The position numbers and the translations under genes are program-made. From contig NW_018407282.1 in the NCBI RefSeq assembly GCF_002113885.1, forward strand, positions 1,019,469-1,083,468: a DNA stretch of 64,000 nucleotides, given 5' to 3'. Below, piece after piece: positions 10,337 through 56,300 of this stretch; position 1 is the stretch's first letter; each line of letters begins with the position of its first letter. Source of the DNA: Mizuhopecten yessoensis. Taxonomy: Eukaryota. The notes beneath the pieces were generated by a model that saw only the letters and a list, made by a program, of their open reading frames with translations, ran no database searches and was not told the DNA's origin.

Positions 10337-10431
10337 AAACCGAAACCGAAAGTAGTAAGATTGAACATAACAAAACAGAAATAACGAAACCGAAAGTGAT
10401 ACGGTGCAATATTTATCCTGAAACCAAAAGT
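10337..10431 (+). promoter_or_regulatory. ISRE/IRF-binding element cluster upstream of HELZ2-like copy 1
   Basis: GAAACCGAAAGT at 10342-10353 and 10386-10397, and GAAACCAAAAGT at 10420-10431. The first two are conserved exactly in copy 2. Confidence 0.65.
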
Positions 10432-10797
10432 CTCCCAACCAGAATCCGCCACAATACTAATTTTCTGAAAGTATATTGATACAGTGTCGATCAATACGAA
10501 TTTCCTGAGTATTGTGTAATACCTATATTCTATAAATCAAGCTACGAGATACAGTGTGTACATGATTGTCAGTTTGAAGAATACCGCTGTAATGTTATAA
10601 GGTTATTTTTTTTCAAAATAACAGTTTCATAAATTTATAAACAATAACGGACCAAGAACCGAACCCAGTCACTCCTGCATTTATTGTGTTAACAGAAGAT
10701 TTACTATCTATCAATAAGTATTTGCTGATATCGATGACATGTATTAACATAACTCATCTACCAGTTTGATGATTTGTCCGATATCCCATAACTGGGC

Positions 10798-51200: not shown

Positions 51201-54200
51201 CCACAACTGATGAACAGTGAGAGGAAACCTAAATGTAGCGTCGAGATCATGGCGAAACCAGAATCCAACAGGTTTGTTCATGTTTATTTAATACAGAGTT
51301 ACTTTTATATTTAATTGATTTTATTTTAGCCTCCTAATTTCATTGCAATAATTGTTTAAAAAACAAATCACCGTACGTTATATTCAAAACTAGATCAACT
51401 GAAAACCGATGTTATGCAATCCGAAAAAAATATTTTTATGACATTGTTTTCCAATTTTCGTAGGAGAACGGAGGCTGCCTTACTTTGTTTGGATAAGGCA
51501 AACGGTTTGGCACAGAATATAGCTAAGGGATTCAAGATTCCAGCCTTAGGTTTGTAATGAATATTTTTTTATTTCATTATTAAGAAATTTCACGACGATG
51601 TTGCGTTATCAGGTTTTGATAGTTTCATATTTGTGGTATGACGAGTTCCAATACTAGTACTAGTAATCAGGTTTCTATTTAGGAAATAATGAGTCTTATA
51701 CTTATTCGCAGTTAAATATTTTCTTTGTGATCAGATTTTATTCTAATTCTCAGGCTTATGTTGTGATATGGCTTTCTTAACTAATAGATTGTTTTATGTT
51801 TCTGATATGATGAGCTAATTTAGCAATACTCAGTTGTATGTTTGCGACATAATAATCTCCTATACCGATTTCCAACTTTATGTCTGCAATACTTTACAAA
51901 CTCTTTTACTATCTCTTAGCATTATGTTTTATGATATGAAGAGCTCCTGTTCCAATCCCAGTTTCATGTTTGTGAAATGATGACCTCCTTTTATTTTTCT
52001 CAGAAATAAAAAAAATGTGTGTTAAGGAGTTTTAGAAATATTTATTATCTAAAAAGATAAATTAGTGACAATAGAAATACTCATCACAGTTAATAAAGCA
52101 GTTCTGAATCTCAATTTGTGATTACATATTGCTTTGTTTATCGTGAAACTTTGTTTTAGTTGTAGGAAATTATTTCTTAAATAATCTGTAGTGATTGTAT
52201 CTACATGAAAGATCTCCATTCCTCTGCCAAACACTGTAGAAATAAATCTAAAACGTGTTTTCAAGAATGGGCATATCTTTGAAAATCATTTTTTAAAATT
52301 CCGATACAATGCAAAACTTTTGATAAAATAAATAATAGATAAAAAAAGGACAAAATGAATTAAAGTGTTCCACGTGTAAATATGCAACGGGGCTAGACCA
52401 GGATTCGAACCGTAAACCAAATTATTATTCTGTCGCCCTAGCCAACTGAGATTCCTGTTCAACGGATGTATGCTGACCCAGAGATGGGAGGTTACTTTAG
52501 AGGTTTTGGTTTTACAGAAATCCTACAGTGTAATCTCTGGTGTTTTGCCTCCAATGGCAAAATAATACATTTCTGATTGAAACTGTGCTGCAGATAATCT
52601 TGTTCTAAATGCTAGACTTTAACTTATAGACAAAAATCATTTGGCGTTAGCGAGAAGAATGGAGGTAGAAGTTGCCGTACCAGGCCTAGCCTGGAACAAC
52701 TCCAAGCAAACTGAGGCTATACGAAAGGCCCTTACCAATAGATTTACCCTCATTCAAGGTCCTCCAGGTAATAAGGATTCTACAATTTTTAATATATAAC
52801 ATCATTACGCAGAAGAAGAAAAAATGGCGTCAACCCTTCCCAAGCTCCTTCGAGTTTCGCTTTTACTTTTGTGTCTTTATAAATGGATTTCTGTTGCGTT
52901 TGGATATGATTTTATATTGATGCTCAGTATATTGTTGTCTAAATTGTGTGATTTTTTTATTATATTGATTCTTAATCACATGCTTATATCAACGAATTTC
53001 AGGATAAACGCCAAATATTATATACATCGAAAATATCGCTATTATTATTATCATCAAGAAGATGTAATGGACATTTTCAGACTGTAAGTGCACCATCTAA
53101 CTGTAACGAAAATCTTATTATTCTTGTCATTGCAAATCCTTTAAGATTTTTCGTTAATTGTAGGAACCGGAAAAACTTTCACTGGAATAAAACTGTTGTA
53201 TCTGTTTACCAAACTGAACAAAGTGTGGCACCAAGAAGGCAACCCATTAAAGCAAGTTGTCTTTTGTGGCCCATCGAACAAGTCGGTTGACCTTGTTGCA
53301 AGTATGTATTTTATGAGAATGTGTAAATTGTTGTATATTGAACATAGGATTTCGAATTGCAGATGTCTTTTTTAAAACTGTTTCAAGATCATAAACAATT
53401 TTTAAAATAGAATTCATCAATAGATTTTGTTTGCAAGAAAACAATAAATCTTCAATAAATGGAATGAATTGAACAGCCTTATATATTGTATAAGTTTATC
53501 ACAAAACAGAAAAAAAATCAATGTATATTATATCTTGCAGGGTTGACAAAGAGAAAACTTGGCGAAGTGGCACCAAGAATGGTCAGAATGTATGGCTCTT
53601 CCCATGAATGTATGGACTTCCCCATTCCGGGAAAGTCATTTAGCAGTAAATCTGGCAGAGCTAAAAACCGGCCAGACAAAGATCTTCAAGACATCGCTTT
53701 ACATCGTTTGATTCGGAAAGAGGGCAAACCTCACGCTGATGAGATTTTGGCATTTGACAAATACTTTCAACAGTTTCGTAACTGCCCGTCAATATCTGAC
53801 CTCGATTTGGCGAAAACGTTTCAGAACAAACTGAAAGAATACAAATCCCTTTTGAGCAAGGCAGGTCAAGAAGAACTTCAACACTATGATGTCATATTTT
53901 GTACAACCGCTATGACTACTAACCCCAAATTCATCCGTGGCACGAAAAACAAGATTTTCCAATGTATTATAGACGAGAATGGAATGTGCACCGAACCAGA
54001 AAGTCTCGCTACAATCATCGCCACAAAAGCAGAGCAGGTCGTTTTGATTGGAGACCACAAACAACTCAGACCTGTGGTCATGTGTCAGCACACAGCAAGA
54101 CTCGGGCTGGAGAAGTCTCTCTTCGAACGGTATTCAGAAAAAGCCGTATTTCTGTCAACACAATATCGAATGGTATGAATCTAATATGATTTGTTCTAAT

Positions 54201-56300
54201 GTTAATTTTCCTGTGATTCATTGAGGGTACGATATTAACTTGACAAGGTATTATTGCAAATGTGTGGTTTGCTTAGTGACTTGCAAATAATTTGGCAAAT
54301 GAAATGAATCTGCTCTTAACCTCATAAAACCCATGAAAGTCAGAAACGTAGGTTTTCACCTAGAACTGTGTCATTTTCCTTAACTTATCAGCTATATTCC
54401 TAGCTCTATTTACCACATTTACATGTACTTGTATTATTCATCCTTCCCTTATAGTTTTATTATCACTAGGACATTAACATACGTAACCGTGACAGAAAAC
54501 GTATTTACTGATCCCATTATGTTTCAGAATCCACGGATCTGCGATTTTGTGTCAGCTGAGTTTTACAACAACAAGCTTGACACTGCTCCGGTTCGTGCAT
54601 GGAAGGAAGAAAAACCCCTTAGCATCTGGAAGTACCCTGATGTGCCTCACATCTTCTGCCACGTGGAAGGGGAAGAGGAATATCTAACAGTTTCTACAGA
54701 GGAGGGAAACGAGCAGTCGTGTAGTAACAAAGCGGAGGTTGAGAAAGTGGTGAGTTTACCTGTTTTTGCTAGGTCTAACACACAGTTCATTCATGTTGCT
54801 GATTCTTTTCAATTCATATCGATGTTCCTTTCATATAGCAGTGACCAAAACATAGAATAACTTGATATCTGCTTCTTTATAATCGCTCTTATTATAAATT
54901 GCTGATATTGTTTCAGTTAATGATAACACGTTCAATTCCTTTAAATAAATGTCAAAATATAAAAAAAAATACAACTTAATGTAACACATGCATGTATCAA
55001 CATGTCTGATATCGTAGATGCAAGTTTTCCGGCGCATGATAAAAACAGAAGGAGTGAACCCTCGGTACATCAACATTATATCACAGTATAACGCCCAGTG
55101 TCATGCCATTACGACGGCGTTGGTTGACTCTGGGTATATCAACGGTAACGTCAACACTGTCGTCGCCAGTCAGGGTAATTACTGTTCTTCTTTTATACGT
55201 CATATATGTAAAAACATGCAAACACGAAAATTGATGGTAACTCATTTTAATATATGCCTGCATATCATCTATTTGAATTTGCTTACATTTATATAAATCA
55301 TAACTATAATTGTAGAGTTATATTACCAAATTAGATTTTGATATTTCCATAGACTATGTCCATCAATATACACAATTCTTTGATTTGTTACGAATGTGAC
55401 GTTATCTTGTTATTTTTTAATTATGTTCGTATAGTCCTGTATAGTCAATTATAAACATAAATTTCATTTCAGTGATTTCATGTGTATTTACTTTTTTGAT
55501 AAAAGTATATCTGTATTTATATCATGCTGGTATTTTTAGGTGGAGAATGGGACTATGTCATTTTCAGTACCACAAGATCCCTGCCAGACTACAAGATTGA
55601 ACCGATTCCGACCCTTGGCTGGTGTAAACAGAACCTTGGCTTCATCACAGACGAGCACCAGATCGACGTAGCCCTGTCTAGGGCTCGTAAAGGCCTTGTC
55701 ATCATAGGTAGGTAATACATGTTTGTGGATCGATGTACATAAATGTTACACAAAATGTTTATTGTATCCGAATGAATTCGTATACTTTTTGTATGTTTTC
55801 AAAAAATGATAAAAATAATGATTCGTATAATGATAAAAGAAATAATTGTCTGTTATGAAAAAAGGTTATATATACGTAACAAGACTTTTGTTCTCCATGG
55901 ATATGAATCATCTGAAGTACAAGCATGTACACCTGTAAATATAAAAAATCAAACTGAAAACAGTTTGATTGAAGAAAATGTGTACACTTTAAGTTGGCTC
56001 TTTCAAATTAGAATTAGTTTAAGGATGTGTGTATTTTCACGACAGCTTTGTCATTCAATTCTTTCCGTCAAATATGTGTATGCATATATCTGGTACAATT
56101 TCGTTTTAGGAAACGAAAACCTACTGCAATGTCACAAGGTGTGGAAACACCTTCTGGATCACTATAGGAAAAGGGAATGTGTTGTGGACGCCAGAGAATT
56201 TCCGCCTCGCACCAAGACTCGGAACAGGAGGAGGAGGGGTGGTGGGTATGCTTCACGACAAACATCGGAGGAGTTTTATAAAGATACCGACCTAGGTTAA
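39264..56300 (+). CDS. HELZ2: HELZ2-like protein copy 2 (~2251 aa): acidic N-terminus, TPR-like region, RNB exoribonuclease, UPF1-like helicase
   Basis: Coding exons: 39264-39896, 40081-40120, 42674-42768, 43396-43605, 43801-43840, 44612-44730, 44970-45107, 47368-47425, 47581-51271, 51464-51549, 52630-52767, 53164-53301, 53541-54172, 54528-54749, 55018-55174, 55540-55707, 56110-56300. Exon lengths equal copy 1 except -18 nt (first) and +6 nt (large exon). Same motifs, and no stops seen. Confidence 0.9.
40116..42295 (+). repeat. Expanded 17-bp minisatellite with a 35-bp higher-order repeat in the intron after coding exon 2 of copy 2
   Basis: 17-bp units flank a ~40900-42200 block of GAGGTGTGTTATAATCA+GAGGGAAGGTAGTAATTA dimers. 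Confidence 0.9.
45231..47357 (+). mobile_element. Full-length HINE/Helentron-type element inserted in the polypyrimidine tract before coding exon 8 of copy 2
   Basis: 5' TTTATAACCCGC..AACGGGGATATT, (CTGT)n, ~161-bp cores at 45316/45476/45637/45800/45961, and 3' GCGGGGGATATAAATTCCACGAATTTGCTTGTT. Inserted at a TT site; absent from copy 1. Confidence 0.8.
45977..46927. mobile_element. ~950-bp MITE with CAGTTGT TIRs and TA TSD, nested in the HINE
   Basis: TA|CAGTTGTTGGATCGCACAACG ... CGTTGTGCGGTCACACAACTG|TA. Removing it restores the HINE core repeat. Confidence 0.8.
47581..51271 (+). CDS. HELZ2: 3.7-kb RNB-encoding exon of copy 2
   Basis: Corresponds to ORF 47601-51314; DPKDSKDLDD at 48879-48908; YTHFTSPIRRYAD present. 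Confidence 0.92.
53541..54172 (+). CDS. HELZ2: Helicase exon of copy 2
   Basis: ORF 53486-54178 contains IIDENGM, LIGDHKQL and QYRM. Confidence 0.9.

What the first reader, a model, noticed from the sequence alone, without database searches (positions are those of the whole stretch)
10337..56300. Tandem pair of ISRE-driven TPR-like/RNB/helicase genes: candidate invertebrate interferon-like antiviral RNA-decay effectors
Seen: two intact 17-coding-exon genes, each combining an RNB exonuclease with a UPF1-like helicase, and each preceded by a conserved cluster of ISRE/IRF motifs. Established: vertebrate HELZ2 is an interferon-stimulated RNB-helicase fusion, and molluscs have IRF factors but no canonical interferon. 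Inference: this is a duplicated, diversifying, IRF-inducible module that unwinds and degrades RNA, with a novel N-terminal sensor or adaptor replacing the zinc fingers and first helicase of HELZ2.
Basis: partly seen in the sequence, partly recalled or inferred. Interest (0 to 1): 0.85.

Follow-up and report, generated by a model that had tools for sequence, protein, structure and literature searches.

The report
Tandem scallop HELZ2-like genes with ISREs
The window holds two intact, already annotated tandem copies of a Yesso scallop HELZ2-like RNA exonuclease-helicase gene, and each promoter carries interferon-response-type DNA motifs that are kept in another scallop genus, so they are plausible but unproven virus-inducible RNA-degrading enzymes.

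Summary
The window is Mizuhopecten yessoensis contig NEDP02003955.1, positions 1,019,469-1,083,468. It holds a ~29-kb tandem duplication with two intact 17-coding-exon genes. Gene A (11062-26208) is identical to XP_021359813.1. Gene B (39264-56300) matches XP_021359811.1 for its first 2232 residues. Both are named 'helicase with zinc finger domain 2-like'.

Each protein has an acidic tail, a helical N-domain, a HELZ2-type OB fold, a CSD, an RNB domain with all four catalytic Asp, an S1/barrel-stalk region, and one UPF1-like helicase. There are no zinc fingers and no first helicase.

Two perfect GAAACCGAAAGT ISREs lie 630-745 bp upstream of each ATG. This is the densest half-site cluster in the window. 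Unalignable ISRE clusters also precede a 60%-identical paralogue in the same four-gene cluster and the Ylistrum balloti orthologue. They are absent from C-type paralogues and from the sampled oyster, mussel and abalone genes.

- HELZ2 kinship and likely IRF control hold.
- 'Diversifying' does not hold (dN/dS 0.36).
- The N-domain is family-wide in molluscs, not novel to these genes. Its TPR nature is only sub-threshold, and a sensor or adaptor role is speculation.
- Inducibility is untested.

Verdict: a new member of a known kind, of moderate interest.

The parts
8992..37578 (.). Duplication unit A (promoter, gene A and downstream spacer)
   Evidence: Colinear blastn diagonal with unit B. The unit B start, 37579, aligns to 8992.
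10342..10431 (+). ISRE cluster of gene A: two perfect GAAACCGAAAGT (10342-10353, 10386-10397) and one imperfect GAAACCAAAAGT (10420-10431)
   Evidence: The motifs lie 720, 676 and 642 bp upstream of the ATG.
10531..10537 (+). TATAAAT, a possible TATA box of gene A, about 110-190 bp downstream of the ISREs. The transcription start site is not mapped.
   Evidence: The motif is conserved in copy B.
11062..26208 (+). Gene A coding span, 17 coding exons, 2255 aa, = XP_021359813.1. Exons: 11062-11712, 11897-11936, 13966-14060, 14892-15101, 15266-15305, 16158-16276, 17073-17210, 17347-17404, 17553-21237, 21459-21544, 22492-22629, 23046-23183, 23463-24094, 24414-24635, 24876-25032, 25405-25572, 26018-26208
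   Evidence: all GT-AG, no internal stop, and the translation is identical to P0121. Accession.
11062..17404 (+). Gene A exons 1-8: acidic, probably disordered tail (aa 1-150) and helical N-domain (aa ~150-450). The most conserved motif is in exon 6 (16158-16276).
   Evidence: No Pfam hit on the window exons even at E<=10.
11932..12850 (+). C-poor 17-bp minisatellite in intron 2 of gene A. It starts at the exon 2 donor and holds 31 splice-donor-like AGGTA[AT]G motifs.
17553..21237 (+). Gene A giant exon 9 (aa 451-1679): basic KKKRRRR stretch, acidic linker, OB_HELZ2 (aa 625-727), CSD2, RNB (aa 873-1242), S1-like barrel, and the barrel/stalk accessory part of the helicase
21459..26208 (+). Gene A exons 10-17: UPF1-like SF1 helicase core (AAA_11 aa 1731-1980, AAA_12 aa 1989-2195)
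   Evidence: The exons map colinearly on the Pfam profiles. Walker A is GPPGTGKT, the Walker B D-E is present, and motif VI is present. UPF1 is the best solved relative.
37579..64000 (.). Duplication unit B (runs off the window end)
38519..38574 (+). ISRE cluster of gene B: two perfect GAAACCGAAAGT (38519-38530, 38563-38574)
38722..38728 (+). TATAAAT, a possible TATA box of gene B
39264..56300 (+). Gene B coding span, 17 coding exons parallel to A, 2251 aa. Exons: 39264-39896, 40081-40120, 42674-42768, 43396-43605, 43801-43840, 44612-44730, 44970-45107, 47368-47425, 47581-51271, 51464-51549, 52630-52767, 53164-53301, 53541-54172, 54528-54749, 55018-55174, 55540-55707, 56110-56300
   Evidence: all GT-AG, no internal stop, first 2232 aa identical to P0125 (XP_021359811.1). 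Domains.
40116..42330 (+). Expanded copy of the intron 2 minisatellite in gene B
45233..47356 (.). 2.1-kb insertion in intron 7 of gene B, absent from A (repeat element with 161-bp tandem repeats)
59762..59938 (+). Extra 3' coding exon used by the RefSeq model of gene B (P0125) in place of the end of exon 17

Best explanation
These are two recently duplicated, functional paralogues in a cluster of at least four HELZ2-like genes of the Yesso scallop.

Each encodes a cytoplasmic-type 3'-5' exoribonuclease fused to one UPF1-like helicase. The RNB domain has a complete active site and is guided by a HELZ2-type OB fold, a CSD and an S1-like barrel. By analogy with human HELZ2, the helicase unwinds structured RNA with ATP and feeds the 3' end into the RNB channel.

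Transcription is most likely driven by IRF-family factors binding two to three ISREs about 110-220 bp upstream of a TATA box. The enzyme would then be raised when nucleic-acid sensing activates IRFs. It would degrade viral or retroelement RNA.

What is shown and what is inferred:
- Shown: gene structure, domains, motifs and the conservation of the ISRE clusters.
- Inferred: RNase and helicase activity, IRF binding, inducibility and antiviral role.
For: Identity and integrity:
- Model A is identical to XP_021359813.1. Both models have 17 GT-AG exons and no stops.
- An uninterrupted 6.8-kb Logan contig from sequencing run SRR14492779 encodes the whole N-domain-RNB-helicase protein P0019 in one reading frame. 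I read it as an mRNA; its species is not given, and its nearest named relatives are oysters.

Domains:
- RNB, OB_HELZ2, AAA_11 and AAA_12 all score above their Pfam cutoffs.
- The RNB motif I has the D-x5-D-x-D-D pattern. Walker A, the D-E of Walker B and motifs III and VI are present.
- The aa 1290-1678 model (pLDDT 86) matches the accessory regions of SETX/Sen1/UPF1 (Foldseek probability 0.9-1.0).

Selection: omega is 0.36 overall and 0.27 in the helicase, so both copies are constrained.

Promoter:
- ISRE 12-mers occur 5 times against 0.62 expected, and the clusters are the top half-site density peaks in the window.
- Nine clusters of at least two GAAANNGAAA cores were found in 316 kb of HELZ2-like loci. 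Four lie within 750 bp upstream of the ATG of A, B, paralogue D and the Y. balloti orthologue, a target of about 1% of the sequence.
- Those promoters are otherwise barely alignable.

Literature:
- Human HELZ2 is interferon-induced and couples its helicases to RNB to degrade structured RNA. HELZ2 exists in some molluscs (PMC10516660).
- Oyster IRF2 and IRF8 activate ISRE reporters (PMC5557890).
- Oyster Helz2 is up at 24 h after OsHV-1 infection (10.64898/2026.05.15.723513).
Against: - There are no expression data for these scallop genes. The transcription start site is not mapped, so the ISREs could lie in a 5' UTR or an intron.
- The ISRE link is restricted to the scallop AB- and D-type genes. 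It is absent within 5-10 kb upstream of the sampled M. gigas, O. edulis, M. californianus, H. rufescens and A. irradians (C-type) genes.
- A and B are duplicates, so their shared motifs count as one observation.
- The GAAA-repeat core is also recognised by other factors.
- Walker B reads DENGM rather than DEAGQ.
- The protein lacks the zinc fingers and helicase 1 that human HELZ2 has, so the biochemical analogy is incomplete.
Confidence: 0.6

Rival explanations
1. The genes are real HELZ2-like RNA-decay enzymes but are expressed constitutively or in a tissue-specific way, for example in the germline for transposon RNA control or for general RNA turnover. On this reading the GAAA-repeat clusters serve another factor or are neutral, and there is no IRF or virus induction.
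For: - Most sampled family members have no ISRE upstream.
- Human HELZ2 also restrains LINE-1 (bioRxiv 10.1101/2022.03.26.485892, listed).
- No expression evidence exists for these genes.
- The scallop TBK1/IKKe homologue did not activate an ISRE reporter in human cells (PMC9879056).
Against: - ISRE clusters are kept at three independent promoters (A/B, D and the Y. balloti orthologue) while the flanks have diverged beyond alignment.
- The motifs are perfect matches to the ISRE consensus, including (GAAAGT)3-type arrays in D.
- Oyster Helz2 is induced by OsHV-1.
Confidence: 0.25
2. Only one of the two copies is a working gene. The other is a young duplicate on its way to pseudogenisation or to mis-splicing, so the pair is not a two-gene module.
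For: - Gene B carries a 2.1-kb insertion in intron 7, an intron 2 minisatellite more than twice as long, and a different annotated 3' end.
- The GenBank model OWF47296.1 is an A/B chimera, so transcript evidence may be confused between the copies.
Against: - Both reading frames are complete, with all 32 splice sites intact and all catalytic motifs present.
- dN/dS of 0.36 at dS 0.14 means that both lineages have been constrained since the duplication.
Confidence: 0.1
3. The ISRE blocks are passengers of a repeat element or chance AT-rich sequence and have no regulatory meaning.
For: The region is AT-rich and the window holds several repeat families.
Against: - The ISRE block is not repeated elsewhere in the window apart from the A/B duplication.
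- No shuffle reached the observed count.
- Different ISRE variants sit at the same relative place in D and in Y. balloti.
Confidence: 0.05

Closest known systems
Vertebrate HELZ2 (human/mouse; Huntzinger et al. 2023, PMC10516660)
   Same: - HELZ2-type OB fold, CSD, RNB domain, S1-like barrel and a C-terminal UPF1-like helicase, in the same order.
- An ISRE-type promoter, as expected for an interferon-stimulated gene.
- The scallop RNB keeps all four Asp. This matches the canonical aspartate that the paper reports in HELZ2 of some other animals, such as monotremes.
   Different: - No N-terminal C2H2/CCCH zinc fingers and no helicase 1. A helical N-domain and an acidic tail stand in their place.
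- About 2250 aa, against 2649-2947 aa in vertebrates.
- Multi-copy and tandemly clustered.
- Activity and inducibility are untested.
Mollusc 'helicase with zinc finger domain 2-like / 3'-5' exoribonuclease HELZ2-like' family (RefSeq annotations; hundreds of bivalve and gastropod paralogues)
   Same: - Identical architecture and exon plan, with a giant ~3.7-kb exon.
- Gene A and gene B are themselves annotated members (XP_021359813.1, XP_021359811.1).
- Orthologues at 71-79% identity exist in Pecten, Ylistrum and Argopecten.
   Different: - The AB-type scallop clade has an extra ~120-residue acidic N-terminal tail.
- Together with the D-type, it has ISRE clusters that the other sampled members lack.
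DIS3L2 / RRP44 (RNB exoribonucleases)
   Same: They are the best solved-structure matches for the CSD-RNB part (E 1e-45 to 1e-38). They share the same catalytic Asp motif.
   Different: They have no fused helicase and no OB_HELZ2 domain. RRP44 has a PIN domain and works within the exosome.
UPF1 / SETX-Sen1 / MOV10 / ZNFX1 (SF1B UPF1-like helicases)
   Same: The helicase core matches AAA_11 and AAA_12. UPF1 is the best solved match (7e-17). The accessory barrel/stalk region resembles that of SETX/Sen1/UPF1.
   Different: They have no nuclease domain. UPF1's CH domain and ZNFX1's NFX1 zinc fingers are absent here.

Membership tests
HELZ2 (vertebrate-type, as described in PMC10516660) | RNB domain preceded by cold-shock/OB domains, including the HELZ2-specific OB fold (PF25049) | tested here: met
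   RNB scores 251-252 bits (cutoff 29.3). OB_HELZ2 scores 64-66 bits (cutoff 29.3). OB_Dis3/CSD2 is sub-threshold.
HELZ2 (vertebrate-type, as described in PMC10516660) | C-terminal UPF1-like helicase (helicase 2) after the RNB/S1 region | tested here: met
   AAA_11 (120 bits) and AAA_12 (151 bits) at aa 1731-2195. The exons are colinear with the profiles. The ATPase motifs are present.
HELZ2 (vertebrate-type, as described in PMC10516660) | N-terminal helicase 1 | tested here: not met
   Only one AAA_11 and one AAA_12 stretch are found in P0121, P0125, P0124 and P0159. The N-terminal exons give no Pfam hit.
HELZ2 (vertebrate-type, as described in PMC10516660) | Six N-terminal C2H2/CCCH zinc fingers | tested here: not met
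   No zinc-finger Pfam family is hit. No CCCH pattern occurs in either model.
HELZ2 (vertebrate-type, as described in PMC10516660) | Induction by interferon or nucleic-acid sensing | not testable with these tools
   Only the cis-motifs could be examined.
Mollusc single-helicase HELZ2-like family | Architecture of helical N-domain, OB_HELZ2, RNB and one helicase, with a giant central exon | tested here: met
   - Gene A is identical to the RefSeq member P0121.
- The N-domain profile built from 25 homologues hits window exons 1, 3, 4, 6, 7 and 8 in order.
- W360, L364 and A373 of exon 6 are invariant in 27 members.
ISRE / IRF-binding element | Match to GAAANNGAAA(C/G)(T/C), clustered near the promoter | tested here: met
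   Two perfect 12-mers per gene. The cluster is kept in paralogue D and in the Y. balloti orthologue.
ISRE / IRF-binding element | Bound and activated by the host's IRF | not testable with these tools
   The only evidence is by analogy: oyster IRF2/8 activate mammalian ISRE reporters (PMC5557890).
TPR repeat proteins | Pfam TPR model above its cutoff, or repeated helical hairpins | tested here: inconclusive
   - The window exons give no hit at E<=10.
- Sub-threshold hits occur in relatives only: TPR_14/TPR_2 (E 0.011/0.06) at the exon-6 equivalent of P0019, and TPR_12 (23.1 bits, cutoff 30.1) at aa 168-212 of P0124.
- hhalign between N-domain blocks gives probability <=3%.
- The spliced N-domain could not be folded, because it has no reference.
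DIS3L2 / RRP44 | Stand-alone RNB enzyme (with or without a PIN domain) and no helicase | tested here: not met
   A helicase is fused in the same reading frame.

The most novel reading that the evidence does not exclude
Scallops may have split an ancient HELZ2-like gene cluster into two classes by promoter evolution. The AB- and D-types, with ISRE clusters, would be IRF-inducible. The C-type, with none or one, would be constitutive. On this reading the zinc-finger-less, single-helicase mollusc form uses its fast-evolving helical N-domain and acidic tail as a docking or targeting module. The locus would then be an invertebrate, interferon-independent counterpart of an ISG effector arm that has expanded by tandem duplication.
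Probability: 0.3. Interest if true: 0.6.

Novelty: new member of a known kind. Interest (0 to 1): 0.4.

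Why it matters
Molluscs lack canonical interferon, yet they mount IRF-dependent antiviral transcription, and the effectors of that response are poorly defined.

This locus offers a concrete, testable case with four useful properties:
- It is a catalytically complete RNA exonuclease-helicase.
- Its vertebrate relative is a bona fide interferon-stimulated gene.
- Its ISRE clusters are conserved across scallop genera.
- Its sister paralogues lack them, which gives a natural within-cluster control.

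If induction is confirmed, it would show that the ISRE-to-HELZ2 link predates, or arose independently of, the interferon cytokine system. It would also give aquaculture genetics a candidate resistance locus.

In itself the finding adds annotation detail to already annotated genes.

Tried and rejected
1. My first splice model had 15 exons. It lacked two micro-exons that the family alignment showed to be missing.
2. My first picks for those micro-exons were wrong or only partly right:
   - A 'CCEEAVAYY' stretch at about 13370 has no donor and is broken by a 50-bp indel in B.
   - My exon 5 (15334-15355) and my exon 9 acceptor (17589) were replaced by 15266-15305 and 17553 after comparison with P0121.
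3. ISRE motifs were sought upstream of seven other family loci. None was found in A. irradians P0006, M. gigas P0057, O. edulis P0017, M. californianus P0015 or H. rufescens P0112, and only one in Y. balloti P0007. The motif link is therefore not family-wide.
4. Promoter D and the Y. balloti promoter do not align with A/B beyond the motifs.
5. A search for the N-domain in other architectures (P0121 residues 150-463, candidates of 1240-3946 aa) returned only scallop orthologues.
6. TPR was tested with Pfam at E<=10, phmmer against the PDB and hhalign for internal repeats. Nothing was significant.
7. ORFs of at least 90 aa outside the two genes have no Pfam hit.
8. Look-ups of P0009 and P0003 failed because they are shorter isoforms.
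10. Paper searches for 'helicase with zinc finger' together with scallop, oyster or antiviral terms found nothing relevant. One broad search was uninformative.
11. No NF-kB site was found. A GAS-like TTCATAGAA sits next to the ISREs in B and D only, and may be chance.

Full report
**What the window is.** The window has no N runs. It is an exact piece of the Mizuhopecten yessoensis (Yesso scallop) assembly GCA_002113885.2, contig NEDP02003955.1, positions 1,019,469-1,083,468. Locus L009, fetched for protein P0125, overlaps window 29264-64000 with 0 mismatches in 34,737 bases.

**Check of the observation: the duplication.** Comparing the two halves of the window gives one colinear diagonal, 8992-32727 against 37579-64000, so there is a ~29-kb tandem duplication. 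Identity is 75-86% in introns and spacers and 87-97% in exons.

**Check of the observation: the genes.**
- Two giant ORFs, 17573-21295 and 47601-51314, carry Pfam OB_HELZ2, a sub-threshold Dis3 CSD2 and RNB.
- tblastn with scallop and oyster relatives located the remaining exons.
- A profile of the family's N-terminus and DNA alignments of the exon borders fixed the small exons.
- The final models have 17 coding exons each, all GT-AG, with no internal stop: 2255 aa for A (11062-26208) and 2251 aa for B (39264-56300).
- Model A is identical, residue for residue, to P0121 = XP_021359813.1. Model B is identical to P0125 = XP_021359811.1 for 2232 residues. After that point the RefSeq model leaves exon 17 for an extra exon at 59762-59938.

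**How the spliced models were handled.** I joined the predicted exons only inside scripts, to test the splice model. I handed no joined letters to any search tool. Searches were run exon by exon, by reference. Once one search had returned them, I also searched with the database ids P0121 and P0125. A fold of the spliced N-terminal domain was left out because it has no reference.

**Domain map** (P0121 numbering):

| Residues | Feature |
|---|---|
| 1-150 | Acidic, Ser/Asp/Glu-rich tail, found only in the scallop AB-type clade |
| ~150-450 | Helical N-domain encoded by exons 1-8 |
| ~475 | KKKRRRR stretch, followed by an acidic linker |
| 625-727 | OB_HELZ2 |
| 727-873 | CSD2 (sub-threshold) |
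| 873-1242 | RNB |
| 1290-1678 | S1-like barrel and helicase accessory region |
| 1731-1980 | AAA_11 |
| 1989-2195 | AAA_12 |

- RNB motif I reads D-x5-D-x-D-D, so all four catalytic aspartates are present. In human HELZ2 the second is Asn (PMC10516660).
- For aa 1290-1678 I predicted a confident model (pLDDT 86, pTM 0.87). Its best meaningful structural matches are the accessory barrel/stalk regions of SETX, Sen1 and UPF1, with Foldseek probability 0.9-1.0 but weak E-values. Two Cys and two His in this region are invariant in all 49 aligned sequences, including both window copies.
- The helicase has Walker A GPPGTGKT, a Walker B D-E (DENGM), motif III and motif VI.
- The helicase exons map colinearly onto contiguous profile coordinates, which independently validates the splice model.
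- The nearest solved structures are DIS3L2/RRP44 for the nuclease (E 1e-45) and UPF1 for the helicase (E 7e-17). This PDB copy returned no chain named HELZ2.
- There is no second helicase and no zinc finger.

**Family context.** Hundreds of bivalve and gastropod proteins share this architecture. They are named 'helicase with zinc finger domain 2-like' or '3'-5' exoribonuclease HELZ2-like'. On the same contig lie a third gene (C, 2083 aa, XP_021359817.1), starting about 4.9 kb beyond the window end, and a fourth (D, XP_021359808.1, partial at the contig end). Pairwise identities define three old types:
- AB-type: A, B, and the P. maximus, Y. balloti and A. irradians orthologues, at 71-79%.
- C-type: 57-59%.
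- D-type: 73%.

A and B are each other's closest relatives at 89.8%. The duplication is therefore specific to the Mizuhopecten lineage.

**Selection.** Between A and B, dS is 0.14, dN is 0.05 and omega is 0.36. By region omega is 0.55 in the acidic tail, 0.41 in the N-domain, 0.32 in RNB and 0.27 in the helicase. This is purifying selection on both copies. With two sequences, positive selection at single sites cannot be excluded, but 'diversifying' is not supported.

**The ISREs within the window.**
- Each gene has two perfect GAAACCGAAAGT motifs 44 bp apart (10342 and 10386; 38519 and 38563). A has a third, imperfect one at 10420.
- The 12-mer pattern occurs 5 times in the window against 0.62 expected. 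None of 100 shuffles reached 5.
- The two blocks are the strongest IRF half-site peaks in the window, with 6 per 150 bp against a mean of 0.41.
- A conserved TATAAAT lies 111-189 bp downstream (10531; 38722). The ATG lies 530-540 bp further on, possibly across a small 5'-UTR intron. This is unverified.
- A and B are duplicates that are about 90% identical here, so their agreement adds nothing.

**The ISREs in other genes.** The informative comparisons are with other loci.
- Paralogue D is 60% identical in protein and its promoter cannot be aligned with A/B. It has four cores at -685 to -339, including a GAAAGTGAAAGTGAAACT array.
- The Y. balloti orthologue P0124 has three cores at -418 to -297. 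The rest of that promoter is nearly unalignable.
- C-type genes have none or one (M. yessoensis C has a degenerate GAAACCGAAATT at -1710; Y. balloti P0007 has one; A. irradians P0006 has none). The sampled oyster, mussel and abalone genes have none.
- In 316 kb of HELZ2-like loci there are nine clusters of at least two cores. Four of them fall in the ~3 kb immediately upstream of the AB/D-type start codons. Counting A and B once, that is about 0.08 expected against 3 observed.

**Literature.**
- Human HELZ2 is interferon-induced and has six zinc fingers, two helicases and an active RNB domain. Its helicases and nuclease cooperate to degrade structured RNA. The authors note HELZ2 in 'some corals and mollusks' (PMC10516660).
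- Oyster IRF2 and IRF8 are induced by poly(I:C) and activate mammalian ISRE and IFN-beta reporters (PMC5557890).
- A 2026 preprint lists oyster Helz2 among the genes raised 24 h after OsHV-1 infection.
- I found nothing on scallop HELZ2-like genes or their promoters.

**The N-terminal domain.**
- It is not new to these genes. A profile of 25 family members hits the window's exons in order. Exon 6 holds residues that are invariant in 27 members.
- It evolves fast, at 52-60% identity among scallop orthologues against 71-79% overall. A database search with it alone recovers only scallops.
- The TPR character is not established:
  - The window exons give no Pfam hit even at E<=10.
  - Relatives give only sub-threshold hits, at two different places.
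  - Profile-profile comparison of its blocks shows no internal repeat.
- 'Sensor or adaptor' remains a guess.

**Verdict.** The genes are members of a known, annotated, mollusc-wide HELZ2-like family. What this work adds is:
- the exact gene models and their match to RefSeq;
- the cluster context;
- evidence of purifying selection;
- a cross-genus and cross-paralogue footprint for the ISRE clusters, with ISRE-poor sister genes as a contrast.

Function and inducibility remain inferences. No step had to be referred.

Noticed in passing
window 11932-12850 and 40116-42330: A C-poor (1.6-4% C) 17-bp minisatellite begins exactly at the donor of coding exon 2. It repeats the splice-donor-like AGGTA[AT]G 31 times in A and 9 times in B, which is 40 of the 49 occurrences in the window. 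The B array is more than twice as long. Its effect on splicing, if any, is unknown.
   Followed up: partly
window 45233-47356 and 61723-62679; also 2978-3399: Gene B intron 7 carries a 2.1-kb insertion that A lacks. About 1 kb of it recurs downstream of gene B at 83% identity. Its 161-bp tandem repeats look by eye like the 151-bp repeats at 2978-3399. This is probably one repeat-element family.
   Followed up: partly
window 1273-1344, 2408-2480, 29548-29636 (-): Two tRNA-like sequences score above the Rfam gathering threshold; one is called tRNA-Glu(TTC). A 77%-identical copy of the first lies on the minus strand between the genes. These are likely tRNA-derived SINE heads rather than tRNA genes.
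   Followed up: partly
window 11062-56300 (GenBank OWF47296.1 = P0158): The genome authors' protein model is a chimera. It uses gene A exons up to about residue 2158 and then the last exons of gene B. This explains why one annotated 'gene' spans both copies. It is either an annotation artefact or a read-through transcript.
   Followed up: yes
window 59762-59938: The RefSeq model of gene B splices out of exon 17 into an extra coding exon 3.5 kb downstream. This gives a 59-residue tail that gene A does not have, so the true 3' end of gene B is uncertain.
   Followed up: partly
window 38475-38483; L003 9323-9331: A GAS-like TTCATAGAA lies just upstream of the ISREs in gene B and in paralogue D. 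It falls within a 21-bp stretch that A lacks. This may be chance.
   Followed up: no
window 20654-21076 (P0121 residues 1485, 1488, 1598, 1626): [quoted passage not shown] They could be a metal-binding site. Their geometry in the model was not checked.
   Followed up: no
window 9415-9451: Two further GAAANNGAAA cores (GAAATAGAAA, GAAAGCGAAA) lie about 900 bp upstream of gene A's ISRE pair. They have no counterpart in copy B.
   Followed up: no
L003 1-10000 (paralogue D, same contig): The D-type gene model starts at the equivalent of exon 7. No N-domain exons are detectable in the 10 kb upstream, and its ISRE cluster sits directly in front of that exon. D may therefore be a naturally N-terminally shorter family member with its own promoter.
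   Followed up: partly
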